The notes beneath the pieces are model-generated. The model was not told the DNA's origin, did not search any database, and saw nothing but the letters and a program-made list of their open reading frames with translations. A stretch of DNA of 64,000 nt, from assembly GCA_035084275.1 (NCBI GenBank), contig CM068769.1:992001-1056000 (forward strand). The letters are read 5' to 3'. Source of the DNA: Hydrolagus colliei. Its lineage: Eukaryota. This document shows positions 9,970 through 33,959 of the stretch, piece after piece. A program made the position numbers and the translations under genes. Position 1 is the first letter of the stretch; every line of letters begins with the position of its first letter.

Positions 9970-10007
9970 GGGTTTTGTACGGATGTCTCGGGGACACCTT
10001 CTCTGTG
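9970..10007 (-). other. RSS: CACAGAG-22-ACAAAACCC
   Basis: Heptamer 10001-10007, 22-nt spacer, nonamer 9970-9978. Confidence 0.8.
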
Positions 10008-11934: not shown

Positions 11935-11973
11935 AGTTTTTGTAGGGCGGAAACACTTATCTGTGTCTCTGTC
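11935..11973 (-). other. Defective RSS: GACAGAG-23-ACAAAAACT
   Basis: The essential CAC of the heptamer is disrupted; nonamer 11935-11943. Confidence 0.75.
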
Positions 11974-13944: not shown

Positions 13945-13985
13945 AGTTTTTGTAGGGCGGTAACGCTGATCTGTGTCTCAATGTG
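13945..13985 (-). other. Non-canonical RSS: CACATTG-25-ACAAAAACT
   Basis: A 2-nt insertion relative to the 11935 paralog lengthens the spacer to 25 nt. Confidence 0.75.
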
Positions 13986-14809
13986 GCTCAAAGCACAGTA
14001 GTACACCGCCGAGACTGTGACTCTCACTTGAGATATGTTTAAAGGGACAGTCCTCCCAACTTTATACACAACCGTTGAGAAATATCCATTGGCAAAGTCT
14101 GCATGTTGTGGATTGTTCCTGACGAATGTGCTGAGGGTATATTCTGGAGCTGAGTTTCGATAGTGGCGGTACCAGAATAGATATATATTGGTGTCTATTG
14201 CTGTTGTATAATTACACTGCAATATTGCATTCTCCCCTTGATCTGCTGTCACAATGGATTGGAGCTGTGTCACAGCGTCGCCTTCACCGTGTCCGAGAAA
14301 CAATACAAATGAATAATAATCATATAAGTAATAACAATCACAAAAATATTGATGTTAGTAATCCTTACATTTGCTACAGCGGCTTAGCCCATATTCGCGA
14401 CTAGACAATGTGCTTCACAGAATATATATTAAGCACATTTTCTGGGAAAAACGTCAGAACCGCTTATCAGTGTCCCCCCCAAAAAACGAGTTAATTTCTT
14501 GATTTATATAAGATTAAATTTTTGGAATTCAATGCGTCAGAGATGCGATCAGTACGTTTATCCACAGTAGGTTCGTATTTAAAATCACTGAAAAATGTAC
14601 GTGTGTGTGCAGCAAGTAAACTTGCCTGTAGATTCGCCCTCACTACTCACGGAGTTACAGGATTCTACCGCTTTTCAAGTCCTGCAATTTATTGGTCAAT
14701 TCATGCAATAAGAAAACATACTCATTGGATTATTTGTGTATGAATATATAAAGTGTGTGCGTGGCTTACCTGCGAAAATAACGATGGCTGCTGCCACATA
14801 AATATACAT
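13986..14809 (-). pseudogene. TCR V, subfamily C: open frame but splice acceptor and RSS defective (leader 14770-14809, V exon 13986-14293)
   Basis: Leader MYIYVAAAIVIFA-G. V is open (DAVTQLQS..LQCNYT..YLFWYRH..VSAVYYCALS), but the acceptor reads TTTCTCG|GA (AG>CG versus CCCAG|GA in the paralog). Confidence 0.85.
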
Positions 14810-15941
14810 TGTAATTTGTGTGCTTAGTGGCATGTGGTGTTCAGGGAGCGTTGATGGTGGAGTTCCACACCGTTGGCTGGGAGGCAGTTAGATGCGGTGT
14901 GGAGGGCAGGACAATCTATGGCATTCAGAATTTACCACAGGCTATAACTGAACAGGTCTATAGGTTGTTTACATGACTTATGTCTCTGTCATTTTGCATC
15001 ATTCACTCTGTTCTACCATCTCGCACCGCCATTGGTTCTCTTCCATCAATATGGTAAAGACCTGAAACAGGTCATTGAGAATGTACAGAGCTAATGGGAG
15101 ACACGTTACATCACCATTTTCTCTGATGCCTCTGCCCTAGTTACTTGCAAGTTTCCTTCCTGCCCCATTTCCTCTCCAGGCTTCTGGGTTACAGCCGTTT
15201 GCGTACAAAACACAAGCTTTTGTTCGCACAATTAATCGACAAAACTTGGTTTGTTTCGTATTTTACTAACCAGTCTGTAAACATGTGACGAACACATCTC
15301 ATGCTTGCTAGCGTACAAATCCAAATTTGAGTTACAGTAAATATTATTTTGTTTGATGTAGCATCTTATCGCATCTTCAAAACATCTCTAATCTCTTCAC
15401 AAGAAGAACTGTCATAGGTGACGATCATGTATTTTCTCAATCAAATACACGGCAGGCAATTACACACAGCCTTGTCTAGCAAAACCTAATGGAGAGTCAT
15501 ACATTTTGTATTGGAGTGTTGACCGAGAAAAGGCTATCGGCCGGTCGTCTAGCAGCCGGTTTCCTACATAATGCTCTGCATTAGTGTAATTATAATCCTT
15601 GCATTCTAGGTTCTGCCTGATTCTTTATTCAGATTTCTGCTGTGAAGTGAATTGAACTGATATGTTGGGATAATTTCAGCACACAGTGTGTACAGAGCAG
15701 CGTCTCACAAACAGACGTGGATTGAAGTGCACATTTGTATATTTTAAAAGGAGTTATGACCCTCAGGAAATTGATCCCTCAATCAACGACGAACCAGATA
15801 CCTACAAACTAATACTATTAACAGAGGTGTGTCGAATAAGGAAAATCGCCCCAAATTTTGTCCAGCCAAGTATCGAACCCCAGCCCTCCTTGTTTGCGAG
15901 ATGAGTTATTTACACAGGTTATAACTACAGGGTCCTCATCC

Positions 15942-15980
15942 TGTTCTTGTACAGGCTCCTCTGAGACACGCAGCACTGTG
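15942..15980 (-). other. 23-RSS: CACAGTG-23-ACAAGAACA
   Basis: Heptamer 15974-15980, nonamer 15942-15950. Confidence 0.93.
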
Positions 15981-16437
15981 CTCGTTGCACAAAAGTAAAT
16001 GGCGGTGTCTGTCACTCGCACATCTTTGATTGATAGTGTGCTTTTTTTCTCGTTTGTGTCAGCCGATGCACTTATCCTCTCTCCTTCCTTCATCTCTCTG
16101 GTTACCGTCACCAAGTACTGGATGGAACCAAGTCCATACTGTTTGTACCAATGGAATACGTCGACGTCGCCAGTGGTGGTGCAATCCAGAGATAAATTTC
16201 CATTTTCATTATCTGTCAGTGCCCGTGGTCTCTGTGACACTTCGCTTTCAGCCAAGACAACTGGGGAATAGAAAGGAACAATCTTCGAAAGAAATTCGAA
16301 TAGTGTCAGCAAAGCTAATTTGTACTGATTCAGGAGTGAAACGTGAAGATAGTGTTGTTCAAACACGTATCCCACTTACACCAACATAATACGAATAAAT
16401 TAAAAACAGCGTATGTTGCAGTGAAATTCTGCATCAT
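15981..16437 (-). CDS. Apparently functional TCR alpha/delta-type V gene segment, subfamily A (leader 16380-16437, V exon 15981-16260)
   Basis: Leader MMQNFTATYAVFNLFVLCW, GTAAGT donor, 119-nt intron, CCCCAG acceptor. Open V: VLAESEVSQRP..SLDCTTTGDVDVFHWYKQYG..STLSIKDVRVTDTAIYFCATS. Good RSS; TGACGCA at 16554-16560. Confidence 0.9.
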
Positions 16438-17603
16438 TCTCAACCGGCTTCGACTCACGGCGAAGTGATTGTTCGAAATGCAACAATCAATCAGCTACAA
16501 GCCAGCACCTGATTTATACATGTGTATTCATTCGTGGAGTCGACAATGAGCCCTGCGTCATTACCTTGTCTGTATTCATTGCTGGAGACATTTTGCGACT
16601 CCACCTATCACTTTCCATTGTGTTCAGAGTAACTTCCCCTCCCCTTGCCTCATACCCTTGCCACGTTGAAAGCACATCTCAAAACCTTCCTCTGCTACAG
16701 TAGCATTGTTAATCAACCTGTTCTTCCAGCCTACTTCTTCCACCATGTTGACGACCAGCTTTTGCAAAGGTACGAGTCTGTACAGCACCATGGGACGATA
16801 TATTGACGTGAAAATCACGGTACATATGTAGCTTAGTGTTATATTGTAAAGGTATTCATTTGAATCCACGAACAATTCCTGTTGAAATGAAATGTCAGCG
16901 AAGGTCTAATTTTAGTTAAGGACTTTTTGTTTCAACAAAAATGTTTTTATTTGCGTTTCACAAGAGTTTATCAGAAATAGAAACGAATAAATGGAACCGA
17001 TCCGTTTTATCTATTTCATCAGCTCTTCTGTGAAAGTGACATTAGATGTCCACCCGATGGACAGAAACAGCCTTCATTTGATGAGTCGCCTTGGGACGTC
17101 GCCCGTGACATGAATGTCGCTCTATAAATGCAATCCTGTTGTTGTTTGATGATGTCGTACTAGGCGAAAGGCATATCCAAATAATTAGGCCCGTTATTGG
17201 GAATAATTTGGGGGGATTACATTAAATGCTATGAGTTTCAAATCATGAATCAGTGCTTGAACCGAGTATCATCTGACTCAGAGGCAAATACACTGTAAAT
17301 AGCGCAAGACTGACTACGTCAATGAACGAAACTCACCTTCAAGTTAAATTATTATTGAGTAGATGCTCAGCCCTTCAGCATATTCGAGACTGAAGTTGAT
17401 AGATTTGCTATGGAGAAAGGGATAAAGGGATTGCGATAAAAAGGGATTAGGCAGGGGCAGTTTGAGTTAGATCAGTAGATAAATTATAAACTTTTTGAAC
17501 GGCGGATCAGGCTAGAGGGGCCGAATGGCCTATTCCAGCTCCTTATTTTTATGTTCGTGTATTAAAACATGTATAAACGCTGCTGATTTGTTCTTGAAGC
17601 AAT

Positions 17604-17618
17604 GATGCCCCGTCGCGG
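17604..17618 (-). promoter_or_regulatory. CTCF-like core about 25 bp 3' of the RSS nonamer
   Basis: CCGCGACGGGGCATC, one mismatch to CCGCGNGGNGGCA; positionally equivalent to 4297-4311. Confidence 0.4.
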
Positions 17619-17642
17619 TTTAGCAGTAAAATAACCAGTTGA

Positions 17643-17681
17643 TGTTTTTGTCCAGAGCCTCGATAGCACAGCAGCAGTGTG
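17643..17681 (-). other. 23-RSS: CACACTG-23-ACAAAAACA
   Basis: Heptamer 17675-17681, nonamer 17643-17651. Confidence 0.9.
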
Positions 17682-17985
17682 GGCTCCACGGCACAGTAAT
17701 ACACAGCAATGTACCTGATCAGAAATGTGCCAATCCTCACTTTGAAATGTTCATTCGATTTTTTGACAGTGGAGGATAATCGAGCTGGGAAGTCAGGGTT
17801 CCTGTGTACGTTATTCCCTGAACCCCGAAATAGATACACCGGAGCTTGGCTGGAAGCTTGTCTGTACCAGAAGAGAGCAATCGCGTCATTGATTTTCTTG
17901 AAGCTGCAGGACAATTTCACATATTGTGCCTCTGGAATCCATGTTTCTGGCATCGATTGTTTCCCCATTTCATGCAGGCTGCTTC
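17682..17985 (-). pseudogene. TCR V exon, subfamily B: open frame, leader apparently defective
   Basis: Open VKLSC..LFWYRQAS..DFPARLSSTV..AVYYCAVEP. The leader remnant ends near 18141 with a GC donor and stops, a SINE head lies in the intron, and the promoter region is interrupted by a CR1. Confidence 0.75.
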
Positions 17986-18346
17986 CTGTGATTGAAATCG
18001 ACAAGGTTATTGAGAAGCAAGTTTGTATTACATACGGATCCTGCTGCTCGATGGTTAGAACACTAGCCAAATAAGAGAGAAGAGCCAGATTCGATTTCTG
18101 GGCAGTGCAAATCTCAGCTATAATTCTTTACTCCACATGCCTCTGTGATCCTACTAGTAACTAGAAATCCAGGTATTAGTCAATTTGCGCATTGCTAAAC
18201 TAGTACAAATCATTCATAAATTGAAATCAATATAAATAATCTTAATTTCGTCAATGAATCCGTGAAGGTTTTGGGCCACTGTTGAGCGAAACTGGCTGTC
18301 ACGTTTCACCCAGAGAACACATTGTCAATTCGCTTTAAAGTATAAA

Positions 18347-21264
18347 GTAAGACGGGAGAAAAATGCAGAGGAAGTAATTTGTGCCTTAGAGTGCATGTAT
18401 GTAAATGCACGAAGTTTGAGAAATAAAATTGGCGAGCTGCAGGCTCAGGTTGCTGCAAGGCAGCAACCTGATGTTATAGCAGTAACAGAGACTTGGCTCC
18501 AGCATGGACAGGAATGGGATTTGAACATTCCTGGTTATAATGTATTGAGGAGGGATAGAGAAGGGAGAAAAGGGGGGCGGGGTGGCAATTTTAGTTAAGG
18601 ACTCAGTGACTGCCTTAGAAAGGAACGAGGTGGAAGAAGAACTAAAAATCGAATCTATCTGGTTAGAAATGAGGAATAAAAAAGGTGCAGTTACACTGTT
18701 AGGGGTATACTATAGACCACCAAATAGTGGGGAGGAGATAGACAAGCAGATCTGCAAGCGTATCACGGAGAAATGCAGAGCTAATAGAGTAGTGATAATG
18801 GGTGACTTCAACTATCCCAACATAGACTGGCAGAATAGTAGAGTAAAGGGTAAGGAGGGAGAAGAATTACTGAAGTGTGTGCAGGACAACTTTCTTGATC
18901 AGTATGTTTCCAGTCCAACGAGGAAAGAAGCATTGCTGGATCTAGTTTTGGGAAATGAGGTAGGGCAAGTTCAACAGGTTTCTGTAGGTGAGCATCTAGG
19001 GAATATTGACCACAACATCGTTAGATTCAGAATACTTATGGAAAGGGATAAGGAACGATCACAGGTGAGGACACTCAACTGGAAAAGTGCTAATTTCAAT
19101 GAGTTGAGGTGGGACCTAGCCAAGGTGGATTGGAAAGAAAAATTGGCAGGTAAGACAACTAACGAGCAGTGGGCAGCGTTCAAAGAGGAGATAGTTCAGG
19201 CACAGGTCAAAAGCATCCCCACAAAGGTGAAATGTAAGGCATCCAAACCTCCCTGGATGACTAAGGAAATCGGTGCCAAAATAAAACAAAAAAAGGATGC
19301 TTATGATAAGTGTCAGGCTCAAAATTCAGAAGGGAACAAAGCAGAATATAGGAAGTGTAGGATAGAACTAAAAAAGGAAGTTAGAGGGGCAAAGAGACTG
19401 CATGAAAAACAATTAGCGAGTAAGATTAAGGGGAACCCTAAGGTTTTTTACCAACATATTAAGAGTAAAAGGTTGGTCAAGGATAGGGTGGGGCCAATTT
19501 GGGACCTAGGAGGAAATCTCATTGTGGAGGCAGAGGGCATGGCTGATGTACTGAATGAGTACATCGCCTCTGTCTTCACAAAAGAAAATAATACAGCCAA
19601 TGCCATGGTATTAGAGGAGATGGTAGGAGAAATGGATAGAATAATTATAACCAGAGAGGAAGTTCTAAAAAGGTTGACGTCGCTCAAGGTGGATAAGTCA
19701 CCTGGTCCGGATGGGATGCACCCTAGATTACTAAGTGAGGCACGGGAGCAAATAGCAGGGACTCTGGCCACGATATTTCAATCTTCCTTGGACACAGGGG
19801 TCGTGCCACAGGACTGGAGGATAGCTAATGTTACTCCCTTGTATACAAAGGGGCAGAAGGACAAGCCTGGTAACTACAGACCAGTCAGTCTAACGTCGGT
19901 AGTGGGCAAACTTCTAGAGTCCATAATCAGGGACAACGTAGATCTTCACTTAGAAAGATATAGGCTAATAAAGGACAGTCAACATGGATTTGTTAAAGGC
20001 AAATCTTGCCTTACAAATCTGATAGAATGTTTTGATGAGGTAACGGAATGGGTGGATAATGGTAGCGCAGTTGATGTAGTTTACATGGACTTTCAAAAGG
20101 CATTTGACAAAGTGCCACATGAGACACTTATTATGAAATTAAAGGCCCATGGCGTAAAAGGGACAGTGGCAGCGTGGATCCACAACTGGCTGCGAGACAG
20201 AAGGCAGAGAGTTGTAGTGAGCGGCTGTTTTTCAGATTGGAGGGAAGTGAGCAGTGGTGTGCCACAGGGATCAGTTTTGGGACCATTGCTGTTTGTAATT
20301 TATATCAATGATCTGGACTTGGGTGTACGGGGTACAGTTTCCAAGTTTGCAGCTGACACTAAGTTAGGGAGAATAGTAAACAGTGAGGAGGATAGTAGCC
20401 ATCTACAAGAGGATATAGACAAATTGGTAAAGTGGGCAGACACATGGCAGGTGAAGTTTAATGCAGAGAAGTGTGATGTGATGCATTTTGGAAGAAGAGA
20501 TGAAAGGAGGCAATATAGGCTAGATAGTACAATTTTAAATGTTATAAAGGAACAGAGAGACCTGGGGATTTGTGCTAGTGACTCGTTGAAGGTGGCAGGA
20601 CAAGGCTGTTAAGAATGCATATGGGATACTAGGGTTTATAAATAGGGGTATAGAGTACAAAAGTCAGGAAGTGCTGACTAACCTCTATAGGACTTTGGTG
20701 AGGCCTCAGCTGGAATACTGTGTTCAATTCTGGTCACCACACTACAGAAAGGATGTGAAGGCATTGGAAAGGGTACAACGAAGATTTACTAGGATGGTGC
20801 CAGCATTGAGGGACTTCAGCTATGAGGAGAGGCTAGATAGGCTAGGGTTATTCTCTCTGGAGCAGAGAAGATTGAGGGGAGACCTAATTGAGGTTTATAA
20901 GATCATGAGGGGTTTCGACAGGGCAAATAGAGAAAAACTATTTCCATTCGTGGGTGAATCTGTGACTCGTGGTCACAGATTTAAAATAGTCTCAAGGCGA
21001 AGTAGAGGGGAGCTGAGGAGAAATGTTTTCACTCAGCGAGTTGTTCGAATCTGGAATGCATTGCCTGAAAAGGTGGTGGAGGCTGATTCGATAACAACTT
21101 TTAAAAGGGAATTAGATCTTTATTTAGGGAGAACGGGTCTATTAGGCTATGGGGAGCGGGCAGGGTAGTGGGATTGAATCGTTCTTTTCAAAGAGCCGGC
21201 ACCGACTAGATGGGCTGAACGGCCTCCTTTTGTGCCGTAAAATTCTATGATTCTATGATTCTAT
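18347..21264 (+). mobile_element. CR1 LINE, near-complete ORF2 (APE endonuclease + RT), frameshifted
   Basis: YVNARSLRNK, VTETWL, GVYYRPP, MGDFNYP, PGNYRPVSL, YMDFQKAFDKV, GVPQGSVLGP, FAADTKL, RPQLEYCVQFWSP. Frameshifts near 18585 and 20610; (ATTCTATG)n tail at 21242-21264. Confidence 0.97.
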
Positions 21265-21589
21265 TGAGGAGCGCGTTGTGACGCCTCAAATTTGTGATGA
21301 AGCACTTTATACATCCCATTTATCATTACTTTTATTTGCTGTTTTGCTCTACTAAACCGTTTAGCAGATATTAAGGGAAAATAATAAAGGTATAAGAAAG
21401 TGGCATACAAGAAAGTAAGATGAGAGTTACTGAGGGCACAGCGCACTTCCCCCACATGAGCATCTTAATCCTGCGTCTGCCATTAACTCTCCAGCATGTG
21501 GTTGTTTATATAGTGAATGTGGATGGAATATAGAGACACTCACTCACTGACGCCCACATGTAAACACGCCCACATTGACAACACTCTAC

Positions 21590-21800
21590 CCACACAGAGC
21601 ACCGGCCGCACAGAGCCCCGAAGACACATTGTCTCGCCCACACAGTTCCCCACCTACACAGAGCCCCCCCCCACACACAGAGCCCCGCCCACACGGAGCC
21701 CCGCCCACGCGGAGCCCCGCCCACACATAGCCTCGGTCACATACAGTCCCGTCGTCACGGAGCTCCGCCCGCACAGAGCCCCGCCCACACTGTCAATGAA
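21590..21800. repeat. GC-box-rich minisatellite (CACAGAGCCCCGCC)
   Basis: Tandem degenerate units; paralog of 5290-5480. Confidence 0.75.
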
Positions 21801-21959
21801 ACTCGTAGACAAAGCTCCTCCCACAAAAGTGAGATGGACGCCTCCTCAACCCTCCTCCTCCTCTTCCTGGGTCTCCTTTTGTGTTGGTGTGAAGCTTCTT
21901 GTTCACCTGCTTCTTGCACAGGGACACCAGTGATCACTCGATCAAGGAAACCTGGACTT

Positions 21960-22320
21960 TAGGGCTATAATTCTAGATTCTGAAGAATATAGAAGATTTA
22001 GAGTTGATTTCATAGAAACCGTTAAGGTTGTTAAGCGGCATTACAAAGTAGACATTGGGAGTCTGTTTCCTCTGGTTGGAGAAACAATAACTATGGATCA
22101 TGGTCTACAGTTTAAGGGATCAGCCTTTTCGCAATGATTTAAGGAAAAACTTGTTCACTCACAGGGTAAAGAATTTATGGAACTTTCTACCCCAAGGGGC
22201 TGTAAATGCTCAGTCCTTGAAAATATTCAAGATGAAGATTGATTGATTTCTTGTGAATAAAGGGATTAAATGATATGGGTAGTAGGTGGGTAGGTGGTTT
22301 TAGATTAGAGAAGGTCAGTG
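21960..22320 (+). mobile_element. Old CR1 3' fragment
   Basis: Degenerate match to the CR1 ORF2 C-terminus and 3' UTR (CTGTTTCCTCTGGTTGGAGAAAC..TTGTTCACTCACAGGGT..GGAAC). Confidence 0.6.
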
Positions 22321-22499
22321 ATCTAGACATGTCAATGCGCTTCAAATCATGCACTTTAAAGTGAAATTAATGTATGTATGTGGGCGAAATGTGGCAGACA
22401 ATTTAACACAGCATTGTCCTACAAACAGTACGATTGAATTGACCAATTTACTAGCGTTTGTTTCTTGAGGGATTTGTATGCGTCATGCTATCCCTGGAA

Positions 22500-23050
22500 C
22501 TATCTCCGGAACTCAAGAGCTCCGCTGCTCGGTTTGCCCATTTATCACCATCCTGCACAAGGATTCTTAGCAATAGAATCCTGACGAAAAGACTTTGGCC
22601 TCAAATCGTAATACATTTTCACCTCTCTATGAATTCTGCCTAACTTTCTTGCTGTTCCCAGCTAATTCTTTCTTAATAATAGTTTTCCAGCAATTATTCT
22701 AAATTTGCGCGTTTGGTTTCGAACAATACTAATATATATTTCCCGCAATCCTAACTAAAATAGCTGGTCAGCAGCTAAATTAAATTAAACCCCATCAGTT
22801 AAGTTAAACTTCCCAAATAATCATACTGCGATAAGCACAATGCAAAATATTTATTTTTGCAGTGTGATCCACTTAACGGTCCCTACTTATTTGGGAGAAA
22901 GACAACAAACGTGACTGACGATTTTTTCTTGGCCAACATAATTCTTGCGTTAGTCGTTGTTTAGACAACCCTTGTACATTTTAACTAAATCAGCAACACT
23001 GTTCATGAGGGAACTGTGTCAACTGTAAAATAAAGCGACTGTTGTAGATG
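22500..23050 (-). pseudogene. Degenerate V relic, copy 3
   Basis: Shares AAATGTACAAG..TTGTCTAAA..CGA.TAACGCA and AGTGGATCACACTG with the relic leaders, and has GATTCTATTGC (FYC) at the matching position. Confidence 0.4.
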
Positions 23051-24283
23051 ATAAGGCCTTTAGTTAAAGAATGCATGTTGATTTCCTGCACGTTGCTGCT
23101 CACGTTGTACATGTGTTTAGTGCACCAGACATTAGTGACTGTTAATAATCGCACGTGTAAAATTGGAGACATATGATGGCACATGGCATTTCGGCTCCTT
23201 CTATATTCCCTGATCCTATCTCCTCAACGGGTAGTTGGTACGTTTGCTTGTATCTGCGAGTTGTGGGCTGGGCATTTTATTTTGCTGAACACTGCTTCAA
23301 ATTTTAACATTCATATGTGCAAACCATGTGTCTGACACATTGGAAATTCCATCAAAACACTTCTGAGTATCCACATCGAACTGTGTATTGTAGTAATAAT
23401 CCTTCCTTTTGATATTGCGCCGTATCATGTCTTCAAGACTTTCGCATGATATATAGTAAAGTCCAGCGATGGTGTTTTGCGACAGAAAATTACACACAGA
23501 CTCGTGTCATGGATCGAGTTGTCGATTTTGGTTGATAGATTATTGCACACGAAAATATGACTCGCCAACCGCTCGTTAAAACTGGATCCAATTTGTTTCT
23601 CGGCAGTGGAGCAATAATAATAGATTTCGTTTCATGTTGTGTAGCAACTTACTGTAATAATAATAATATTTGCATTTGGTTTTCAAATATGCATTTGAAG
23701 CGGTCTGAGACGCCGTCTGGCGTGGAGGACGCTATATAAATATAAGTTCTTGTTGTTTGTTAATATAACACTTTTCGCGTCTTCGAGACATATGAAAGTG
23801 CACCACAGACTACACGGTAAAATGTACTGCCGGTACATTTATGGGTGGAAATTGGCAGCAAATGCCGACAGCAGTGTCCCGCGGACAACTATTTATTGTG
23901 TCACCAACTTATTATCATTTTATTGTTTTGAAGAGTATCATCCCAGGAAAAGTGATCCTCCATTAACGACTGACCAGGTTACTACATATTGCTAGATAAA
24001 GCGAGGCTTATGGAGTAAGTAAACTTGGGCAACATTTCCACCTGCCCGGAATAGAACCCAGGACTCTCTCTTCAGAGGAGTTTGTTCTAATCATTGAACT
24101 ACTGGACTAGTAAACTGGCTCCAGTTAATGAAGGACAATTGAAAATTGGTTTGCGAAATAAGCTTAGAAAGTCGAAAGTTTTGAAAAATCATGTGGTTTG
24201 TATTGTAACTAGCGTTTGGTGAACGTTTCTTTCACCATATCCAAATTGCACCATGCGTTTCTGTGATATCTTCCATATAGTGT

Positions 24284-24600
24284 GGAGTCCTGTAGCCCAG
24301 TGGTTATAGCACTCGCATAACAAACGTGAGATTTGTGTTTCGAATCTCAGCAGTTTGGAGTGAAACCTTGGCCAAGTTTCTTTAAACGACACCCCGAATA
24401 ATACTCCTTCCAACAATAAACTAAAATAAAAAATAGGTCATTTCAGTCCATGACTGTTTGTGGGGACGCTGCTGTGCACAATTGGCTGCCGCGTTTCACC
24501 TACATATATACAGTCAAATCACTTTACCGTGTATTCTGTGAAGCATTTTCAGACATCTAGAAGACACGAAAAGCGATATATCAAAAAGCAAGGATTAAAA
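24284..24600 (+). mobile_element. tRNA-head SINE
   Basis: GGAGTCCTGTAGCCCAGTGGTTATAGCACTCGC head, with body and tail. Confidence 0.8.
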
Positions 24601-25006
24601 TGCATAATTTACAATCTAGAATAACATTTATCCAAATCCCAACTCTAACGAAATCTATCTACATATGCACAGTGTAAAGTCTTCGAGAATTCACAAAACG
24701 ATTCACAGCTTGCACTGCGAAATGATTTAACTGTCTTTTTATTGGCTGAATATCGTAGCCAATTCCGCACATTAGCTTCCCACAATTGACTTGTTTTGGA
24801 GCGGAGCAACTTCTTCAAAGGAATTCTTATCCCCAGTAAAGCGATTCGCCAATCGATCATAAACCGGGTTCCTCCATATTTCAATGTAAATAGATGGGTG
24901 TGGAGTAAGGCGGATGGCTGAGTGTTTCACCCTGCGGAGATTCCAGCTCAGCTTCCCTTGTTTGCAACGCAAGTTCTTTAACTATTGAGCTGCAGCAACC
25001 TCAGCC

Positions 25007-25045
25007 TGTTTTTCCACAGGTCCTTCGTAATCACACATCACTGTG
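25007..25045 (-). other. 23-RSS: CACAGTG-23-GGAAAAACA
   Basis: Heptamer 25039-25045, nonamer 25007-25015. Confidence 0.88.
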
Positions 25046-25949
25046 CTCTCCGCACAGAAGTAGGTGGCGGAGTCAGAAACTCTCACGTCTCGGATCGATA
25101 ACGTGCTATTTTTTCCAACAGTCAAAGCATTTATCCTCTCCTTCGGCTTCTTCTCTCTTGATCAGAACAACAAAACTAACATTTATATAGCGCCTTTCAC
25201 GTCGAGAGGACATGCCAAGGCGATGTACAGTCAGGTAGGACATGAGCATGGTGGGAAGGATCAGGGAAGGATAAAGCATATTAGGAAAAGTAACTGTATT
25301 AGTGGGCGAAACATGGCAGCCAAATTGCGCACAGCAGTGTCCCACAATCAGTCACGGAAGTGGGACTAGGGGCAAAAGGGGGTAAAGAAGCAAAAGGGGA
25401 GGGGTCGAGGCAGGGGGAAAAAAGGCAGGAAAGTCGACTGTATATTTGTGGGCGAAACGCGGCAGCCAAATTGCGCACAGAAGTGTCCCCACAAACAATC
25501 GCGAAAATGGGGTCAGGGGAGAAAGGGGGAAAAGAGGGTAAGGGGGGAGAGGGAGGGAAAGGTGGGATGGGTTAGGGTTAGGGAGGAAGAGGGGGGAGAA
25601 AGGGGGGCAAGGAAGAGAGGGATAGATGGGAGGGGGCAAGATCACGAAGAGGGAAGAGGGAGGGAAGGGGAAAAGGGAGGAGAGAAAGTGGGGAAAGGGA
25701 GTGAGGGAAGAAGAAGATGGGGGCAGGGGTGGGGGGAATCAAACAAAAATATTAAACAATAATAAATAACAAAACAATAATATTAACAACAAAAACAGCA
25801 ACAAACAATAATCAACAATCGTCCAACAATCCACCAGCAACCACTCCCTGTCCTCGCCGCCCGCCCGGACGATCCCTGAGATGGTGGGAAAAAAAAGGGC
25901 GCGGAAAAAAGGTCCCAGTGTGGTGTCAGGCCCCAAAACCAACCGGCTC

Positions 25950-26101
25950 CTCAGTCGATGAACCCGGTGACTCGGTGATGGCCCTGGCACCTCGGACATG
26001 GTGTGTCTGGCCGGCTCGCACAGCAGCAACAGCAGCAGCCCGATCGCCGTCTGGATCTCCCGCGACGAGATGATCCGTCGCTTGCAGCACCTGGGCGCCT
26101 T
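25950..26101 (-). pseudogene. H2B: Histone H2B C-terminal fragment
   Basis: [27 protein letters not shown](G)ARAIT versus the H2B motif [35 protein letters not shown]; one frameshift. Confidence 0.85.
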
Positions 26102-26227
26102 CCCCTCGCGGAAGACGTGCGCCACCCACTGCCTGAGGAAAGTGCCGAGGTCGCGGCCTTGCTGGGTCCTGTCGAGGGGCCATTCTTCGCACAGCCGGAG
26201 GATGCGCCGACAGCGAGTGGCCGCCAT
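26102..26227 (-). pseudogene. UQCC2: UQCC2 N-terminal fragment (42 codons)
   Basis: [42 protein letters not shown] versus recalled vertebrate UQCC2 [42 protein letters not shown]. Confidence 0.9.
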
Positions 26228-26394
26228 TCCCTCCGTGATCCTCCCCGTCGTCCAAAAAGATGGTATTCGTTGGCCGACTGCCTATAGAGGAAGAACCGGC
26301 AGCGATGGAAGCCGGCTCCAGCTGGTGGGCTGAGCGGTGCATAGCGTGAAAGCTCTGTCCCCGCGATCGTTCCAGCCTCAAGATCTCTCGCCTC
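26228..26394 (-). pseudogene. PEBP4: PEBP-family (PEBP4-like) internal fragment
   Basis: [36 protein letters not shown] versus recalled PEBP4 [36 protein letters not shown] (the PEBP 'PP..GxHRY' motif). Confidence 0.75.
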
Positions 26395-27223
26395 GGGAGC
26401 GGGTGGTCCGTGTGAAAAAAATATCACTATATATCTAATATTACTATTAGATAAAATATTAGATTAAATAGATGATATAAAATATAAAATATCATCTATC
26501 GCCAGGCGAGGTGGAGAGAGTGCAGGATAGCACCTGCACTCTCCACCTCACCACCAATGACAACACTAGTAATTGGATGGAGCCGTTTCCATACTGTATG
26601 TACCATTGAAAGATTGGGCTGGGCACAGTGGTGATGCACTCTATAGATACATTTCCATTTTCGTTCTGTGTCATGGTCAGTGGTCTCTGTGTCACTTCAC
26701 TTTCAGCGAGCACACCTGGGGGAACAGACATGCACATTCTAGGAAAGAAACGTGGAAAAAAGCTGAAACTAAAATGCAGTTAATAGGAAAACAAGCATAT
26801 GTTTGTCCAATCTGGGGCTTTACTTACAGAAACACAGAATCATTAAATTGAGGATAATGCGCATTGCAGTGTAACATGGATTCATTCTGATTCCTCGCTG
26901 AGTCTAGTTAAAATCTGTCAGAGAACTGCAATGGGAAATCATCCAAAGGCTGTTTAGCGATTATGAATGTTTCTCGAATACTTTTAGCTGTGCAGGTTAT
27001 AACTATGTTCTGGGTGACGGCTTCACTGACAACTCACTTCCTGTATGTTGCCTTGTGCTACATTCATTCGTCAAGCGACAATCATTAGTGTCAACACTTA
27101 CAGCTGGTAAAACAGAGGCATGTTTGTAGATGACGAAAACACGCCCAATCGTCCTCCCAGCTCGAAAAGTGACACACGTTTTCGAAAGAGGCAAGCTTTC
27201 CAACCATTAAAGTAAAGGACATC

Positions 27224-27540
27224 GAATCTGTGACTCGTGGTCACAGATTTAAAATAGTTTCAAGGCGCAGTAGAGGGGAGCTGAGGAGAATTTTTTTCAC
27301 TCAGGGAGTTGCTCGAATCTGGAATGCATTGACTGAAAAGGTGGTGGAGGCTGATTCGATAACAACTTTTAAAAGGGAATTAGATCTTTATTTAGGGAGA
27401 ACGGGTCTATTAGGCTATGGGGAGCGGGCAGGGCAGTGGGATTGAATCGCTCTTTTCAAAGAGCCGACACAGACTAGATGGGCCGAATGGCCTCCTTTTG
27501 TGCCGTAAAATTCTATGATTCTATGATTCTATGATTCTAT
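27224..27540 (+). mobile_element. 5'-truncated CR1 3' end
   Basis: Nearly identical to the last ~310 bp of the 18347-21264 CR1; (ATTCTATG)n tail. Confidence 0.95.
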
Positions 27541-28242: not shown

Positions 28243-29714
28243 TGATTTTTTTTTTCGTTAATTGAACACACAACAACTGCACACTAGCATCAGGTGAGAT
28301 GTACATAAAGGAAAATCGGATCTCGGCTTTAAGTCCCTCTAAAATTGTATAGTGTTAAACTGAGTTGAGGCACAAAGCAATAATAATTATCATTGGACTC
28401 GACATAACTTTTTCCACATTCTCCACGTATCTTTTGGGACGTCACATAATAATCTGTACAGTGAATTAAGCGCTCATTTGTGGGGAAATTGGTCAGCGAA
28501 TTGAACAAAGCAGGGACCCACAAAGATTCGTGGATGGAAGTGAACAGTTCATCATTTTTTGTTATTATGAAAACAACAATATCCTGGGATTCAATTGGGA
28601 AATGATTGATTATATAAACACGTGCTAACTAATGAAGATGTATTGGACCTTTTCAATAGAACACTGTGGAGAAACTCAAAGCGTGATCTTACGTAATTGG
28701 TGATGACGAAACCCATACAAAAATTAATAACATCTGAAGTGAATGCACTTGGAGCTGTGATACCGCATTCAGCCACTGGGCAGTTGTTGTTTTGTAAACA
28801 CAAGGAGTAATTACAGTGCAACAACGCCAACTGTTGGACATATGGTTGTACTAAAGATATTCACGTCAATGCCCATCTGCCTGGACTTGGGGAGCATTGC
28901 ATTCTCTCTCCATCCCCACAACATTCACCCCCCACCCCCCCACCCCATTCCCCTTTCCAATTCAGTTCCTTATTGCTTTAAGTTATTGGGTGCGTCAGGA
29001 AACTGGTAATAGGGTGCACTGCGGAATTTTAACTAAATACTTTTATTCCTGCTGTTAGCACACATTTGTCTTTCGCATCAGCGCTTTCTGTGTTTGAATT
29101 GCTTCTGTGTATTTTGAATTACAGCAACAAAAGCGTATACTTAGATAGCACTGCTGAAACAGAGTAGAGTGTCAGAGCTCGACACAGTTGTGAAGCCTGA
29201 CGCTGGTCATAATGAATGGGGAAAGGAGCGTAGGTGCACGCACCCCTACATTTATCCACTCACCATCCTCACACAACACAACCAGCTTCTCACCATTCTC
29301 GCCTTCTCGCAGGTCATCTCAATCATTTATATTTACACGAAGTGTATGTAAGTATCAACTGTTTTACTTTATGCTAAACTATGTATTCTATTGGACCTCA
29401 AAATATTTACAGAATCCAATACATTCTCCGCTAATTCTGTGCAATTCACCTAAACATGGGATTTCACAGCTGTTCGAATGGAATGTGCTCTCCCTCACAA
29501 TTAAAAAAATGCATCCTAACCAACCAATTGCTGAGAGTATAAAGCTTTCGATCCGCACACCACAGTGCCTAAGAAAACCAACAACACATTGGGCATGTTA
29601 ATTCAGGTCTGTGTGTGGGACACTGCTGTGTGAAATTGGTTGCCGCAATTCATTTTAAATTTGCTCTGTTTGCTGTGAGGAGCCATGGTTCGCCAATACG
29701 ACGTGAAAAGCTCC

Positions 29715-30365
29715 ATATCAAATTAAAACTACCTCAACCCCGAAGCTGCCGAAACACTTGTGCACGCATACATCACATCACGGCTGGACAACGGAAACTC
29801 TCTCCTCGTCGGCCTCCCCAGTTCCTCCATTCACAGGCATCAGGTCATCCAAAACTCTGCAGCCCGTGTACTATCCAGCATCCGCCTCCGCGACTATATA
29901 ACCCCCACCCACGCCCGTCTCCACTGGCTCCCCATCCTCCAGAGTATCGAGTTCAAGATCCTCGTCCTCAACTTCAGGGCCTTACACGGCCTTGCCACGC
30001 CCTAATTAACCGACTTACATTCTCCCTGTACGCCCACGCGGTCCCTCAGTTCAGTAGGTCTTCGCCTGCTACAAGCCCGACGCCCGAACTGGCCCACCAC
30101 TGGAGGCCGGGCTTTCAGTTTTTCCACTCCCAACCTGTGGAATTCCATCCCCCAATCCCTCCGTTTTTCTTCTTCCCTTTCCTCTTTCAAGGCCGATTTG
30201 AAGACGTTCCTCTTCAACCGTGCCTTTTTTTCCCCCAAAATTTTTTTCGATCTCCCCTACGCGTTTCATCCCCATCCCGAACATTCCCCTCCCAGCTCGG
30301 GTCACACGCCTCCTCTGCAGCGCCTTGGGACGTCCTCCCGACGTGAAAGGCGATTTATAAGTTTA
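29715..30365 (+). mobile_element. L2 LINE 3' fragment
   Basis: HAYITSRLDNGNSLLVGLP..IQNSAARVL..ITP..LHWLP..IEFKIL (L2 ORF2 C-terminus), ending GACGTGAAAGGCGATTTATAAGT..TTG. Confidence 0.9.
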
Positions 30366-31718
30366 AGTTGTTGGTGTTGAAATAATATTATTTTTATTAT
30401 TATTATCATAATGATTGTTAATCTCGCCCCCATTTCAGTATGTTTCTTGTCCCCGGCCCATCCCACACCAGCATTGACAAATGTGCTATCAGCGTATTCT
30501 CTACCAAATTCAGGAACTCCATCCTCGATTCATTTTGCATTCTCACGTCACATTCTAACTTTAAGGCCTACCTTAAAATGTTTCTCTTTAAATCATCATC
30601 ATTAGTCCACCCACCTCCCCCAATCACACACCACTCCTACATTCCCACTCGCCCCCCAAGCGCAACCACCAGCTCAGATAACAACGCCAGACTTTGCAGT
30701 CACTTGGGACGTTGTATCAAAATGAAAAAGTGACTGTATACATGCGATTTGTTGTTGTTATCTCGTCCTGACGCAGACATTTACATGCGATTCTATAGGA
30801 TTCTGATGACAGTCCAGCCCGGCTGGCTGACTCATAGGTCTGCACTGCTGTTGACTGCAAATGCTGGAATATGGTTTGAACTGTAAATTAAATAACTGCC
30901 AATTAAATAAAATAAAACTATTCTAACAATAGTGATAATACTTGCATTGCTTTTTCTACTTTTCAGACCTTAACGACGTCTCAAGGCGCTTCACAAAATA
31001 AATTATAAAGTGAATTGACTGTATATTTTGTCGTCAAAATTCGGCACGCCATTTCCGCATAGCAGTATCCCAAATACAGTCGTTGATTGAAATGACCAAT
31101 TGTATTACATACTTGTTGCTTTATTTTAGACGGATTATTATCTGTCGTGTGGGTGTGGAGTAAGGAAACTTGTCCATGGTCTGCACATAGGTCTGATGCG
31201 TATAAGTCGAGTCCTCTAACAATTGAGCGAAAGGATCTACAGATTTTCAGTTTTCGAACTCAGAGCTAATCAAACTCACGGAGACTTTTGGTACTGTATG
31301 AATGTAACTTTTATGTAATCACGAGAATGTAAAGATTAGCGTTGCTAATCTGTATCTATTGCCTTCTCCTTCTATCTGTAGAGTGTTCCTCTTGACGCCA
31401 GTGATTGAATAATACACACTACAGAATTTTCCTGCTATTATTGCTCAACCCACTAACCCTTACAATCAATTACTTTACCACAATACAGTACGGAGACCAT
31501 ATCATCAAAATAATCCCTTCACTACTGGAACAACATCAGTGAAAACAAGAGCAGTAGGGGACCACAGCTAGTTTTCATATCCCCCCAGCCCCAACTCCAC
31601 ATCACAGATCATGTCTTATCACAAACAAAACATTTGCTTGCTTTCGTCCATTTTTCATCCAAATCATGTCCTATTACATTCTTTATCCTCGCAAACAGGC
31701 AGGAAGAAGCGAGGGATT

Positions 31719-32646: not shown

Positions 32647-33836
32647 ATAGATTCATCGAATCATTGAATGTTACGGCCCAAAAGGAGGCCATTCGGCCCA
32701 TCTAGTCTGTGCAAGCTCTTTGAAAAGAGCGATTGAATCCCACTGCCCTGCCCGCTCCCCATAGCCTAATAGACTTGTTCTCCCTAAATAAATATCTAAT
32801 TCCCTTTTAAAAGTTGTTATCGACTTATCACCACCATTTCAGGCAATGCATTCCAGATTCGAACAACTCGCTGAGTGAAAAAACTTCTCCTCAGCTCCCC
32901 TCTACTTCGCCTTGAAACTATTTTTAATGTGTGACCACGAGTCACAGATTCGCCCACGAGTGGAAATAGTTTTTCTCTATTTGCCCTGTCGAAACCCCTC
33001 ATGATCTTATAAACCTCTATTAGGTCTCCCTTCAATCTTCTCTGCTCTAGAGAGAATAACCCTAGCCTATCTAGCCTCTCCTCATAGCTGAAGACCCTCA
33101 ATCCTGGCACCATCCTAGTAAATCTTCTTTGTACACTTTCCAGTGTATTCACATCCTTTCTGTAGTGTGGTGACCAGAATTGAACACAGTATTCCAGCTG
33201 AGGCCTCACCAAAGTTTTATAGAGGTTAGTAAGCACTTCCTGACGTTTGTACTCTATACCCCTATTTATAAAGCCTAGTATCCCATATGCCTTCTTAACA
33301 GCCTTGTCTACCTGTCCTGCCACCTTCAACGAGTCACTAACACAAATCCCCAGGTCTCTCTGTTCTTTCCACCATTTAAAATTGTACTATCTAGCCTATA
33401 TTGCCTCCCTTCAATTCTTCTCCCAAAATGCATCACCTCACACTTCTCTGCATTAAACTTCATCTACCATGTGTCTGCCCACTTTACCAATTTGTCTATA
33501 TTCTCTTGCAGATGGCTAATACCCTCCCCACTATTTACTATTCTCCCTAAATTAGTGTCATCTGCAAACTTGGAAACCATACTCCGTACACCGAAGTCTA
33601 GATCATTGATGTAGATTACAACCAGCAATGGTCCCAAAACTGATCCCTGTTGCACACCACTGCTCACTTCCCTCCAGTCTGAAAAACAGCCGCTCACTAC
33701 AACTCTCTGATTTCTGACTCGCAGCCAGTTGTGGATCCACGCTGCTACTGTCCCTTTTACGCCATGGGCCTTTAATTTCCTAATAAGTCTCTCATGTGGC
33801 ACTTTGTCAAATGCCTTTTGAAAGTCCATGTAAACT
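32647..33836 (-). mobile_element. 5'-truncated CR1 (RT C-terminal half + 3' UTR)
   Basis: YMDFQKAFDKVPH..FADDTNLG..KWADTW*..RPQLEYCVQFWSP; same subfamily as the 18347 copy. Confidence 0.95.
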
Positions 33837-33959
33837 ACGATATTTGGATGATGTGTTAAAGGGAGAGTGAGACTGGCGAATTGAAGCATCAATTGTGCTG
33901 GGAGAGTGGAGGTTCACCCCGATGGAATATGGGGGAGAGTGTTTGACTCTGACTGGGAT
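33837..33959 (+). repeat. 123-bp inverted duplicate of the SRCR exon 5' end (matches 34528-34650)
   Basis: GGAGAGTGAGACTGGCGAAT..GGGAGAGTGGAGGTT..GACTGGGAT is present in both orientations. This copy keeps TGG where the main exon has TAG. Confidence 0.85.

What the first reader, a model, noticed from the sequence alone, without database searches (positions are those of the whole stretch)
25163..26560. Tripartite PEBP4-UQCC2-H2B gene chimera inserted into a TCR V exon
Seen: the most distal V is cut into two halves that rejoin codon-for-codon. The 1.4-kb insert reads on the minus strand: 5' hairpin, AT-rich spacer, a GC-rich block, TTG- and CT-rich tracts, two SINE cores, then a SINE/L2-type tail. 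The GC-rich block is three unrelated coding fragments fused head to tail in the same orientation: PEBP4-like (26228-26394), the first 42 codons of UQCC2 (26102-26227) and the H2B C-terminus (25950-26101). The UQCC2 and H2B parts share one frame, and the PEBP junction overlaps the UQCC2 ATG (GAATGG). Known: L1-type RTs make template-switch chimeras, and Helitrons and Pack-elements capture multiple gene fragments. Inference: this is a gene-capturing non-autonomous element or a multi-template retro-chimera mobilised through its L2/SINE tail. An alternative Helitron reading exists (A|TC at 25161-25163, hairpin, CTAG|T at 26566-26570), but the CTAG also fits the V sequence. Human UQCC2 and the main histone cluster both lie at or near the extended MHC, which may be coincidence.
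Basis: partly seen in the sequence, partly recalled or inferred. Interest (0 to 1): 0.85.

Follow-up and report, generated by a model that had tools for sequence, protein, structure and literature searches.

The report
Multi-gene retro-chimera splitting a TCR V exon
A 1.4-kb insert that splits a T-cell-receptor V gene segment of a chimaera-like fish is a dead patchwork of reverse-transcribed RNA pieces (spliced PEBP4 exons, UQCC2 exon 1, the end of histone H2B, two SINE pieces) that entered through an L2-type SINE tail: a rare but known kind of accident, not a Helitron.

Summary
A V exon on the minus strand (RSS heptamer at 25039-25045) is split by about 1.4 kb, and removing 25162-26560 restores one open V frame. 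On the minus strand the insert carries three contiguous gene pieces in the same orientation: PEBP4 (26391-26225), UQCC2 (26227-26091) and H2B (26083-25951).

New findings:
- The PEBP4 piece is exons 4 and 5 joined without the intron that teleost and amphioxus genes have at that spot, so it came from spliced RNA.
- The UQCC2 piece is the whole coding part of exon 1. It is 88% identical in DNA to Callorhinchus milii and stops at the splice donor.
- PEBP4 also stops at its exon-5 donor, overlapping the UQCC2 start codon by ATG.
- The 3' end of the insert is a 5'-truncated Deu-type SINE with the L2-type tail and (TTG)n end seen on other copies in the window.
- There is no poly(A), no pol III head and many T-runs.
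- The Helitron reading fails, because its "CTAG" end is V sequence conserved in two paralogous V segments.

Best reading: an L2-type target-primed reverse transcription event that strung together at least five RNA templates. This is a new variant of LINE-mediated chimeric retrocopies. Copy number, exact age and species could not be tested.

The parts
25007..25045 (-). Recombination signal sequence of the V segment: heptamer CACAGTG 25039-25045, 23-nt spacer, nonamer GGAAAAACA 25007-25015
25046..25161 (-). 3' half of the V exon (SREKKPKERINALTVGKNSTLSIRDVRVSDSATYFCAE)
25159..25161 (-). TCA, repeated at 26558-26560. Either a 3-bp target-site duplication or two adjacent V codons
   Evidence: Alignment with paralogous V exons. 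V2 has 6 codons here and V3 has 5 codons plus 1 nt, so both readings fit
25162..25372 (-). 5'-truncated Deu-type SINE piece: core at 25293-25353, tail GGCGCTATATAAATG at 25180-25194, TTG-type end ttagttttgttgttctga at 25162-25179. This is the 3' end of the insert
   Evidence: tail shared with L2-2_CM according to PMC5499810
25373..25435 (-). CT-rich spacer between the two SINE pieces
25436..25519 (-). Second SINE piece with core only and no tail. It is 81% identical to the first over 104 nt
25520..25739 (-). CT-rich low-complexity tract, including (CCCTAA)2.5 at 25569-25583
25740..25840 (-). TTG-rich tract of about 100 nt, resembling an expanded L2-type microsatellite tail
   Evidence: tails of other copies end in (GTT)n
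25841..25950 (-). GC-rich stretch of unassigned origin. Probably includes H2B 3' UTR. No histone stem-loop was detected
25951..26083 (-). Histone H2B C-terminal coding piece (residues ~86-125 plus stop TGA at 25951-25953), frameshifted, with a 2-codon insertion
26084..26090 (-). 7-nt junction GTGCTGC. The GT may be the first two intron bases of UQCC2 or part of H2B
26091..26227 (-). UQCC2 coding exon 1, from ATG (26225-26227) to the last exon base before the donor. 87.9% nt identity to C. milii over 140 nt, with one 1-nt deletion
26225..26345 (-). PEBP4 exon 5 ([27 protein letters not shown], a +1 frameshift at 26265, then [14 protein letters not shown]). It ends at the exon-5 donor position and overlaps the UQCC2 ATG by 3 nt
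26346..26391 (-). PEBP4 exon 4 (ARDLEAGTIAGTELS plus 1 nt), joined to exon 5 with no intron
26392..26425 (-). TTTTTTTCACACGGACCACCCGCTCCCGAG: a pyrimidine-rich stretch ending in AG directly before PEBP4 exon 4. Possibly the retained 3' end of PEBP4 intron 3 (inference only)
   Evidence: not testable, because no DNA is available for the C. milii PEBP4 gene
26426..26504 (-). AT-rich stretch with short perfect palindromes (26433-26464 and 26468-26499)
26505..26552 (-). GC-rich hairpin with ~19-bp stem and 6-nt loop, near the 5' end of the insert
   Evidence: z=-9.7 for 26395-26570
26553..26557 (-). Last 5 nt of the insert (TTGGT on the minus strand) next to the V sequence
26561..26715 (-). 5' half of the V exon (GVLAESEVTQRPLTMTQNENGNVSIECITTVPSPIFQWYIQYGNGSIQLLVL). 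It includes CTAG at 26566-26569

Best explanation
The insert is a dead retro-chimera. An L2-type LINE reverse transcriptase primed at a nick in the V exon on an RNA carrying the L2-type SINE tail. It copied the tail and Deu core of a SINE. It did not finish that template. Instead it went on to at least four further RNA stretches, all in the same sense:
- a second SINE core;
- low-complexity and TTG-rich RNA;
- the 3' part of a histone H2B mRNA;
- exon 1 of UQCC2;
- exons 4+5 of a partly spliced PEBP4 transcript, possibly with the end of its intron 3.

The cDNA was then joined to the other side of the break with 0-3 bp of target duplication. The joining of templates happened either by template jumps during reverse transcription or, for the two junctions that lie at 5' splice sites, by RNA-level joining (trans-splicing or ligation) before reverse transcription.

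The result has no function. It destroys the V segment and the gene pieces are decaying.

Shown: the identities, order and orientation of the pieces, the spliced PEBP4 junction, the donor-site ends, the SINE tail at the 3' junction, and the V sequence on both sides.

Inferred: the enzyme (L2-2_CM-like), the order of events, and whether the chimera was made at this site or copied from an older master copy.
For: - Three gene pieces are contiguous and in the same orientation.
- PEBP4 reads ...GTELS|RYAPLSPP... with no intron. Osmerus PEBP4 has a 132-nt intron at that position and amphioxus PEBP has an intron at the same place.
- The exon 3/4 and exon 5/6 boundaries are supported in cartilaginous fishes by isoforms that diverge or end there.
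- UQCC2 matches C. milii exon 1 from the ATG to the donor CAG|GT at 87.9%.
- PEBP4 exon 5 ends in ..AATG, overlapping the UQCC2 ATG.
- The minus-strand 3' end is the SINE tail plus a TTG-type end, as in other window copies. SacSINE1-CM and CmiSINE tails match the L2-2_CM LINE (PMC5499810).
- There is no A-run of 5 or more on the sense strand, so this is not L1-type.
- There are 19 T-runs of 4 or more and no tRNA-like head, so this is not a pol III SINE unit.
- Uninterrupted paralogous V exons serve as empty sites, and the V frame is restored by excision.
- Precedents exist: bipartite and tripartite LINE template-switch chimeras (PMC2104539), and primate mRNA/L1 chimeras whose exons end exactly at splice donors upstream of long introns (bioRxiv 10.1101/2025.02.02.635956). 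The C. milii PEBP4 gene spans 108 kb.
Against: - The target duplication is at most 3 bp, so a single integration event is not proven.
- About 500 nt of the insert have no identified source: the CT-rich and TTG-rich tracts, 25841-25950 and 26392-26557.
- The 5' parts are fragments, not the full-length RNAs of classical chimeric retrogenes.
- The gene pieces carry at least 3 frameshifts and many changes at conserved residues, while the split V exon is still open. This fits better if the chimera is older than this insertion.
- The H2B evidence is only moderate, and no histone 3' stem-loop was found.
- The intron position in the holocephalan PEBP4 gene itself could not be read.
- The partner LINE is not in the window; the LINE present is CR1-type with an (ATTCTATG)n tail.
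Confidence: 0.62

Rival explanations
1. The insert is one copy of a pre-existing composite element: an older PEBP4-UQCC2-H2B retro-chimera with its own L2-type (TTG)n tail. That element was transcribed by read-through from elsewhere and retroposed again. It would then be a gene-fragment-carrying non-autonomous element, possibly multi-copy.
For: - The gene pieces are decayed: at least 3 frameshifts, 7 of 11 changed UQCC2 codons non-synonymous, and 12% nt divergence from C. milii. The V halves keep one open frame.
- The internal ~100-nt TTG-rich tract right after the gene block looks like a second L2-type tail.
Against: - There is no second copy in the window.
- The word-based protein search with the UQCC2-H2B ORF found only true UQCC2 proteins.
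- Exact look-ups of three insert ORFs found nothing. These are weak negatives.
- The unit has no pol III head and many T-runs, so it lacks a promoter of its own.
- The divergence from C. milii may be partly a species difference: third codon positions carry 8 of the 14 changes.
- Similarity of 25790-25905 to the SINE tail is not significant.
Confidence: 0.2
2. The chimeric RNA was made before reverse transcription, by trans-splicing or RNA ligation of exons cut at their 5' splice sites, and was then retroposed as one template.
For: - The PEBP4 piece ends at the exon-5 donor and the UQCC2 piece at the exon-1 donor. PEBP4 homology begins at the exon-4 acceptor.
- The same pattern in primate mRNA/L1 chimeras was read as possible trans-splicing, favoured by long downstream introns (10.1101/2025.02.02.635956). 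PEBP4 spans 108 kb in C. milii.
Against: - UQCC2 exon 1 is a first exon, and C. milii has ..GGACG|ATGG before the ATG, with no AG acceptor.
- The H2B entry point lies inside an intronless coding sequence.
- The 3-nt ATG overlap at the PEBP4/UQCC2 junction fits microhomology-guided template jumping equally well.
Confidence: 0.2
3. Two or more independent insertions are nested at one spot: a 5'-truncated SINE first, then one or more further retro-units landing at its 5' edge. Alternatively, a double-strand break in the V exon was repaired by end-joining with capture of loose cDNA fragments.
For: - Only 0-3 bp of duplication flank the whole insert.
- An internal TTG-rich tract could mark the 3' end of a separate unit.
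- Several stretches have no assigned source.
Against: - All identified pieces have the same orientation.
- There are no internal target duplications and no V sequence between the units.
- The 3' junction coincides with a complete SINE tail, which random capture would not give.
Confidence: 0.1
4. The insert is a Helitron on the plus strand (5' TC at 25162, hairpin, 3' CTAG at 26566-26569, inserted between A and T) that captured gene fragments as DNA.
For: The TC, the hairpin 15 nt before CTAG, and the A|T flanks are all present in the sequence. Excision at 25162-26569 is also in frame.
Against: - CTAGTGTTG(TCA) is V sequence, conserved in both paralogous V exons. The true right end is ...CACCAA, which is not CTRR.
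- The left 210 nt are an antisense SINE 3' end, found in many copies.
- The PEBP4 piece lacks its intron, so it is RNA-derived.
- Excision at the Helitron limits would leave the V exon 4 codons shorter than its intact paralog V2.
Confidence: 0.02
5. The insert is an assembly chimera: unrelated reads joined inside the V exon.
For: None directly. No reads were available.
Against: Both V halves are present, in order, on the same strand and in phase across the insert. The 3' junction is a natural SINE end. A mis-join would not restore the exon on the far side.
Confidence: 0.03

Closest known systems
LINE-mediated template-switch chimeric retrogenes, bipartite and tripartite: U6/L1 and others in mammals, MINE and WEIRD-MgSINE-MGL in Magnaporthe (Buzdin, Gogvadze et al.; PMC2104539)
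   Same: Several unrelated RNAs are copied head to tail in the same orientation. The 3'-most part is a 5'-truncated LINE or SINE with an intact 3' end. The gene parts come from RNA. A tripartite chimera with a SINE as the middle or 3' part is documented.
   Different: - Here the tail is of the stringent L2 type with a microsatellite end, not poly(A).
- The 5' parts are short exon-bounded fragments, not full-length RNAs.
- There are at least five recognisable templates plus unassigned stretches.
- The flanking repeat is 0-3 bp rather than 10-20 bp.
Primate mRNA/LINE-1 chimeric insertions whose gene exons end at splice donors (bioRxiv 10.1101/2025.02.02.635956)
   Same: Sense-oriented 5' exons, often exon 1, end exactly at the splice donor, frequently with no matching acceptor on the partner. 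The following introns are long.
   Different: - Those have a (near) full-length L1 as 3' partner, TSDs, an EN motif and poly(A).
- Here two donor-ended pieces from different genes are chained to each other and to an intronless histone piece.
- The mobilising tail here is an L2-type SINE tail in a cartilaginous fish.
SacSINE1-CM / CmiSINE families of Callorhinchus milii with the L2-2_CM tail (PMC5499810)
   Same: The Deu-type core and the GAAAGGCGCTATATAAATG tail with a TTG-type end at the insert's 3' end match SINE copies in this window and in the C. milii locus L001.
   Different: The insert has no tRNA-like head and two partial cores, and about 1.1 kb of foreign sequence replaces the SINE 5' part. 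It is not a SINE copy but uses a SINE 3' end.
Helitron and Pack-type DNA-level gene-fragment capture
   Same: Several gene fragments from unlinked genes lie in one element.
   Different: The captured PEBP4 piece lacks its intron, there are no terminal inverted repeats between the ends, and the Helitron 3' terminus is host sequence.

Membership tests
LINE-mediated template-switch chimeric retrogene (criteria listed in PMC2104539) | All parts joined directly in the same transcriptional orientation | tested here: met
   PEBP4, UQCC2, H2B and both SINE pieces are all sense on the minus strand. PEBP4/UQCC2 overlap by 3 nt and UQCC2/H2B are within 7 nt. Unassigned spacers exist elsewhere in the insert.
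LINE-mediated template-switch chimeric retrogene (criteria listed in PMC2104539) | The 3' part is a 5'-truncated LINE/SINE copy with an intact 3' end | tested here: met
   25162-25372 is core plus tail plus a TTG-type end, without a head.
LINE-mediated template-switch chimeric retrogene (criteria listed in PMC2104539) | [quoted passage not shown] | tested here: not met
   Only PEBP4 exons 4-5, UQCC2 exon 1 and the last ~40 codons of H2B are present.
LINE-mediated template-switch chimeric retrogene (criteria listed in PMC2104539) | [quoted passage not shown] | tested here: inconclusive
   Only TCA (3 bp) is repeated, and it may be V sequence. Typical TSD length for this L2 family was not determined.
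LINE-mediated template-switch chimeric retrogene (criteria listed in PMC2104539) | RNA origin of gene parts (intron loss) | tested here: met
   The PEBP4 exon 4/5 junction has no intron. The intron is present in Osmerus (L002) and amphioxus (L003). It was not read in a holocephalan gene.
Helitron (canonical) | The 3' end ...CTRR belongs to the element, preceded by a hairpin, with insertion between host A and T | tested here: not met
   CTAG at 26566-26569 lies in V sequence conserved in paralogs V2 and V3. The real end is ..CACCAA.
Helitron (canonical) | The 5' end TC belongs to a Helitron terminus shared by other copies | tested here: not met
   The TC is the complement of the last bases of a SINE tail. 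The adjacent 210 nt match antisense SINE 3' ends found at many sites.
Helitron (canonical) | Other genomic copies with the same termini | not testable with these tools
   No access to the source genome. None in the window.
SINE (SacSINE1-CM-type, L2-2_CM partner) | tRNA-like pol III head | tested here: not met
   ARAGORN finds none. The alignment with full copies shows the head missing. There are 19 T-runs of 4 or more in the sense strand.
SINE (SacSINE1-CM-type, L2-2_CM partner) | Conserved core and LINE-matching 3' tail | tested here: met
   The core is 88-98% identical to other window copies and 91-92% to copies in C. milii L001. The tail motif is shared with other window copies. The link to L2-2_CM comes from PMC5499810 and was not aligned here.
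L1-type processed pseudogene | Poly(A) tail and 7-20 bp TSD | tested here: not met
   No A-run of 5 or more in the sense strand of the insert. TSD is at most 3 bp.
Pack-type / TIR transposon with captured fragments | Terminal inverted repeats and genomic (intron-containing) fragments | tested here: not met
   No inverted repeat pairs the two ends. The PEBP4 piece is spliced.

The most novel reading that the evidence does not exclude
In a holocephalan, an L2-type (stringent, non-poly(A)) reverse transcriptase chains exons that have been cut at their 5' splice sites. UQCC2 exon 1 and PEBP4 exon 5 both end at the donor. This would imply reverse transcription or RNA joining in contact with active spliceosomes (free 5'-exon intermediates or trans-splicing). 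The product may be a re-mobilisable, L2-tailed exon-shuffling element rather than a one-off accident.
Probability: 0.15. Interest if true: 0.7.

Novelty: new variant of a known kind. Interest (0 to 1): 0.45.

Why it matters
LINEs of the L2/CR1 type recognise their own 3' tail and are thought to make few retrocopies of cellular mRNAs. This locus shows a route by which they can still do so: start on a SINE tail and carry on over other RNAs.

It adds a cartilaginous-fish, L2-type example to a phenomenon documented mainly for L1 and a fungal LINE. It also reproduces the recently reported and still unexplained pattern that captured exons stop exactly at splice donors, here twice in one insert. So the locus bears on how RNA-level exon shuffling happens.

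For the immune locus itself the consequence is ordinary: one V segment is inactivated.

Tried and rejected
- Helitron reading: rejected by alignment with two paralogous V exons.
- Rfam scan of 25000-26700: only non-significant miRNA-like matches to the hairpin and no histone 3' stem-loop. A pattern search for the stem-loop also found nothing.
- Pfam did not detect the H2B piece.
- The word-based protein search with the PEBP4 ORF found nothing. The HMMER representative search was needed.
- Fetching PEBP4 genes: C. milii (108 kb), Heptranchias (318 kb) and a bird (117 kb) were too long for DNA to be returned. Two other look-ups were not on record. Intron positions therefore come from Osmerus and amphioxus.
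- Exact look-ups of three ORFs of the insert, to find independent assemblies or copies: none on record.
- Test of whether 25790-25905 is a degenerate second SINE tail: not significant, with 19 of 300 shuffles scoring as well.
- ARAGORN for SINE heads: none.
- Species identity: repeats shared between the window and C. milii L001 are at most 82% identical, which is not diagnostic. The species is left as 'holocephalan-like, C. milii or a relative'.
- Typical TSD length of this SINE family: not determined, because the alignment did not give clean 5' ends.
- One fuzzy-regex script timed out.
Full report
**1. What is there**

The window is vertebrate DNA with several T-cell-receptor-type V segments on the minus strand. 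Their RSS heptamers are at 2296, 15980 and 25045, and V-like ORFs lie at 11845-12300, 13797-14303 and 17549-18070. Many SINE copies are present.

The V segment with its heptamer at 25039-25045 (23-nt spacer, nonamer 25007-25015) is split. Its 3' half is 25046-25161 and its 5' half is 26561-26715. Removing 25162-26560 gives a single open V frame:

...QWYIQYGNGSIQLLVLSREKKPKERINALTVGKNSTLSIRDVRVSDSATYFCAE

The observation itself is correct.

**2. Where the insert ends, and the Helitron question**

I aligned the two V halves with the uninterrupted paralogs V2 (15980) and V3 (2296). V1 CTAGTGTTGTCA (26558-26569) lines up with V3 TTGGTGTTGGGC and V2 TTGGTGACGGTA.

- The CTAG that would be a Helitron 3' end is therefore V sequence.
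- The true right end of the insert on the plus strand is ...CACCAA, at 26557.
- TCA occurs on both sides (25159-25161 and 26558-26560). It is either a 3-bp target duplication or two adjacent Ser codons. V2 has six codons at this spot and V3 has five plus one base, so both readings fit.
- No inverted repeat pairs the two ends.

**3. The three gene pieces**

A tblastn of parental proteins against the whole window puts the only hits below E=0.5 in one contiguous minus-strand block:

| Piece | Coordinates | E-value | Identity |
|---|---|---|---|
| PEBP4 | 26388-26266 | 1e-10 | 60% to C. milii PEBP4 |
| UQCC2 | 26227-26096 | 6e-20 | 80% |
| H2B | 26083-25991 | 1e-3 | 58% |

Independent support for each:
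- **UQCC2.** Pfam UQCC2_CBP6 scores E=2e-8, above the curated cut-off. The best database hit is Callorhinchus milii UQCC2.
- **PEBP4.** Pfam and PDB gave only weak PEBP-family hits. A HMMER search of 1.84 billion representatives gave 16 hits at E<=1e-3. The nine single-stretch hits I retrieved look like PEBP4. The one with the highest identity (57%, E=4e-6) is annotated PEBP4 of C. milii.
- **H2B.** The PDB hits listed are all H2B, aligned to residues ~86-125, at E~2e-3 each after joining the two frames. H2B is the least secure piece but is consistent.

UQCC2 and H2B share a 162-codon ORF. This is unremarkable in 65% GC sequence.

**4. RNA origin and exon-bounded pieces**

I fetched the C. milii UQCC2 gene (L001). 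The insert matches exon 1 from the ATG to the last exon base at 87.9% over 140 nt, with one 1-nt deletion. The match stops at the donor CAG|GT. The piece is therefore the whole coding exon 1 (46 codons), not 42 codons.

The C. milii PEBP4 gene spans 108 kb and could not be read. Shark and bird genes were also too long.

The Osmerus gene (L002) and an amphioxus PEBP gene (L003) both have an intron exactly between ..L(S/T)S and (D)Y..PTPP. The insert reads ..GTELS|RYAPLSPP.. with no intron at that point. By parsimony this intron is ancestral to vertebrates, so the piece comes from spliced RNA.

The other PEBP4 limits also sit at exon boundaries:
- PEBP4 homology begins at the exon-4 acceptor position (26391). 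The boundary is shown by a C. milii transcript that diverges after ..INIG and by shark isoforms that diverge after ..NI(L).
- After a +1 frameshift at 26265 the piece continues as [14 protein letters not shown], matching C. milii TIFLDNEERKSNG.
- It ends at the exon-5 donor position. That boundary is shown by Osmerus and by shark isoforms that end or diverge at ..KSF(G).
- The last bases..AATG, overlap the UQCC2 ATG by three bases.

Two pieces from unrelated genes therefore end at 5' splice sites.

Directly upstream of exon 4 lies TTTTTTTCACACGGACCACCCGCTCCCGAG, a pyrimidine-rich run ending in AG. The AT-rich palindromes and the hairpin may thus be the retained end of PEBP4 intron 3. This is inference only.

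**5. The 3' end and the likely engine**

Read on the minus strand, the insert ends with a Deu-type SINE core (25293-25353) and the tail ...CGACGTGAAAGGCGCTATATAAATGttagttttgttgttctga.

- The same tail motif followed by a short (GTT)n run ends other copies in the window and copies in the C. milii locus.
- Full copies in the window have a tRNA-like head about 150 nt upstream of the core. The insert does not.
- Luchetti et al. (PMC5499810) report that C. milii SacSINE1-CM (Deu) and CmiSINEs share a tail homologous to the L2-2_CM LINE.
- The only LINE in the window is CR1-type with an (ATTCTATG)n tail. The partner LINE is therefore inferred, not seen.
- A second, tail-less core (25436-25519) is 81% identical to the first.
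- CT-rich tracts and a ~100-nt TTG-rich tract lie between the SINE part and H2B.
- The sense strand has no A-run of 5 or more and has 19 T-runs of 4 or more. This rules out an L1-type poly(A) event and means the unit cannot be a pol III SINE unit.

**6. Mechanism**

The best-supported reading is target-primed reverse transcription by an L2-type enzyme that started on a SINE tail and continued over at least four more RNA stretches.

This is the logic of the bipartite and tripartite chimeric retrogenes of mammals and Magnaporthe (PMC2104539). The criteria listed there compare as follows:
- Same orientation: met.
- 5'-truncated LINE/SINE as the 3' part: met.
- RNA origin: met.
- Full-length 5' parts: not met.
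- 10-20 bp direct repeats: not met or not decidable.

The donor-terminated exons have a recent precedent in primate mRNA/L1 chimeras. There, exons, often exon 1, end precisely at splice donors upstream of long introns, often without an acceptor on the partner. The authors of that work raise trans-splicing as an explanation (10.1101/2025.02.02.635956).

At this locus C. milii has no AG before the UQCC2 ATG, and the H2B entry point lies inside an intronless coding sequence. I therefore slightly prefer template jumps onto RNAs ending at the donor, or microhomology-guided jumps, over splicing. The data do not decide this.

**7. Age and copy number (unresolved)**

- The gene pieces have at least three frameshifts. 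UQCC2 has 14 changes in its first 126 nt, at codon positions 5/1/8, giving 7 non-synonymous and 4 synonymous codons.
- The V halves keep an open frame.
- This suggests that the chimera may predate this insertion and be a copy of an older, L2-tailed element, for which the internal TTG tract would be the old tail.
- The excess of third-position changes also fits a species difference from C. milii.
- No second copy is in the window. The word-based protein search and the three exact look-ups found no copy. These are weak negatives.
- The species could not be fixed.

**8. Verdict**

The Helitron alternative is refuted.

This is a non-functional insertion that inactivates one V segment. It is a new variant of a known kind of accident. 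Its interest lies mainly in the L2-type tail, the number of templates and the two splice-donor-ended exons.

Noticed in passing
window 18582-21264 (+); also 32647-33892 (-) and 27275-27538: A CR1-type LINE with long APE+RT ORFs (676 and 165 aa), ending in three ATTCTATG repeats, plus truncated relatives about 90% identical. Its tail differs from the SINE tail that ends the insert.
   Followed up: partly
window 25569-25583: Two and a half vertebrate telomere repeats (GGGTTA on the plus strand, CCCTAA in the sense of the insert) sit inside the CT-rich spacer of the insert. Their origin is unknown.
   Followed up: no
window 2296-2590, 11845-12300, 13797-14303, 15975-16375, 17549-18070 (all minus strand): Further V segments. 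The one at 15980 looks intact. The one at 2296 is frameshifted between its two halves. No V with an RSS was found at coordinates above 26715, so the split V is the most upstream one in the window.
   Followed up: partly
window 29615-30378 and 57661-58302 (+): Two ~700-nt related repeats with long spurious ORFs end in the same GAAAGGCG.T.TATAAGT plus (GTT)n-type tail as the SINE. They may be 3' parts of the partner L2-type LINE or a longer SINE family.
   Followed up: no
   Followed up: no
L001 (C. milii, GCA_018977255.1 MU249850.1) 10001-15938 and 18968-25938: C. milii UQCC2 has 4 coding exons over 5.9 kb and lies tail to tail with an ITPR-type gene, as UQCC2-ITPR3 do in human 6p21 (the human arrangement is from my own knowledge). 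Its start, GACGATGGCGGC, resembles a TISU element, which suggests a very short 5' UTR.
   Followed up: no
window 25739-26227 (-): A 162-codon ORF starts at the UQCC2 ATG and runs through the H2B piece and into the TTG-rich tract. No relative with this architecture was found. It is probably a by-product of GC-rich sequence.
   Followed up: partly
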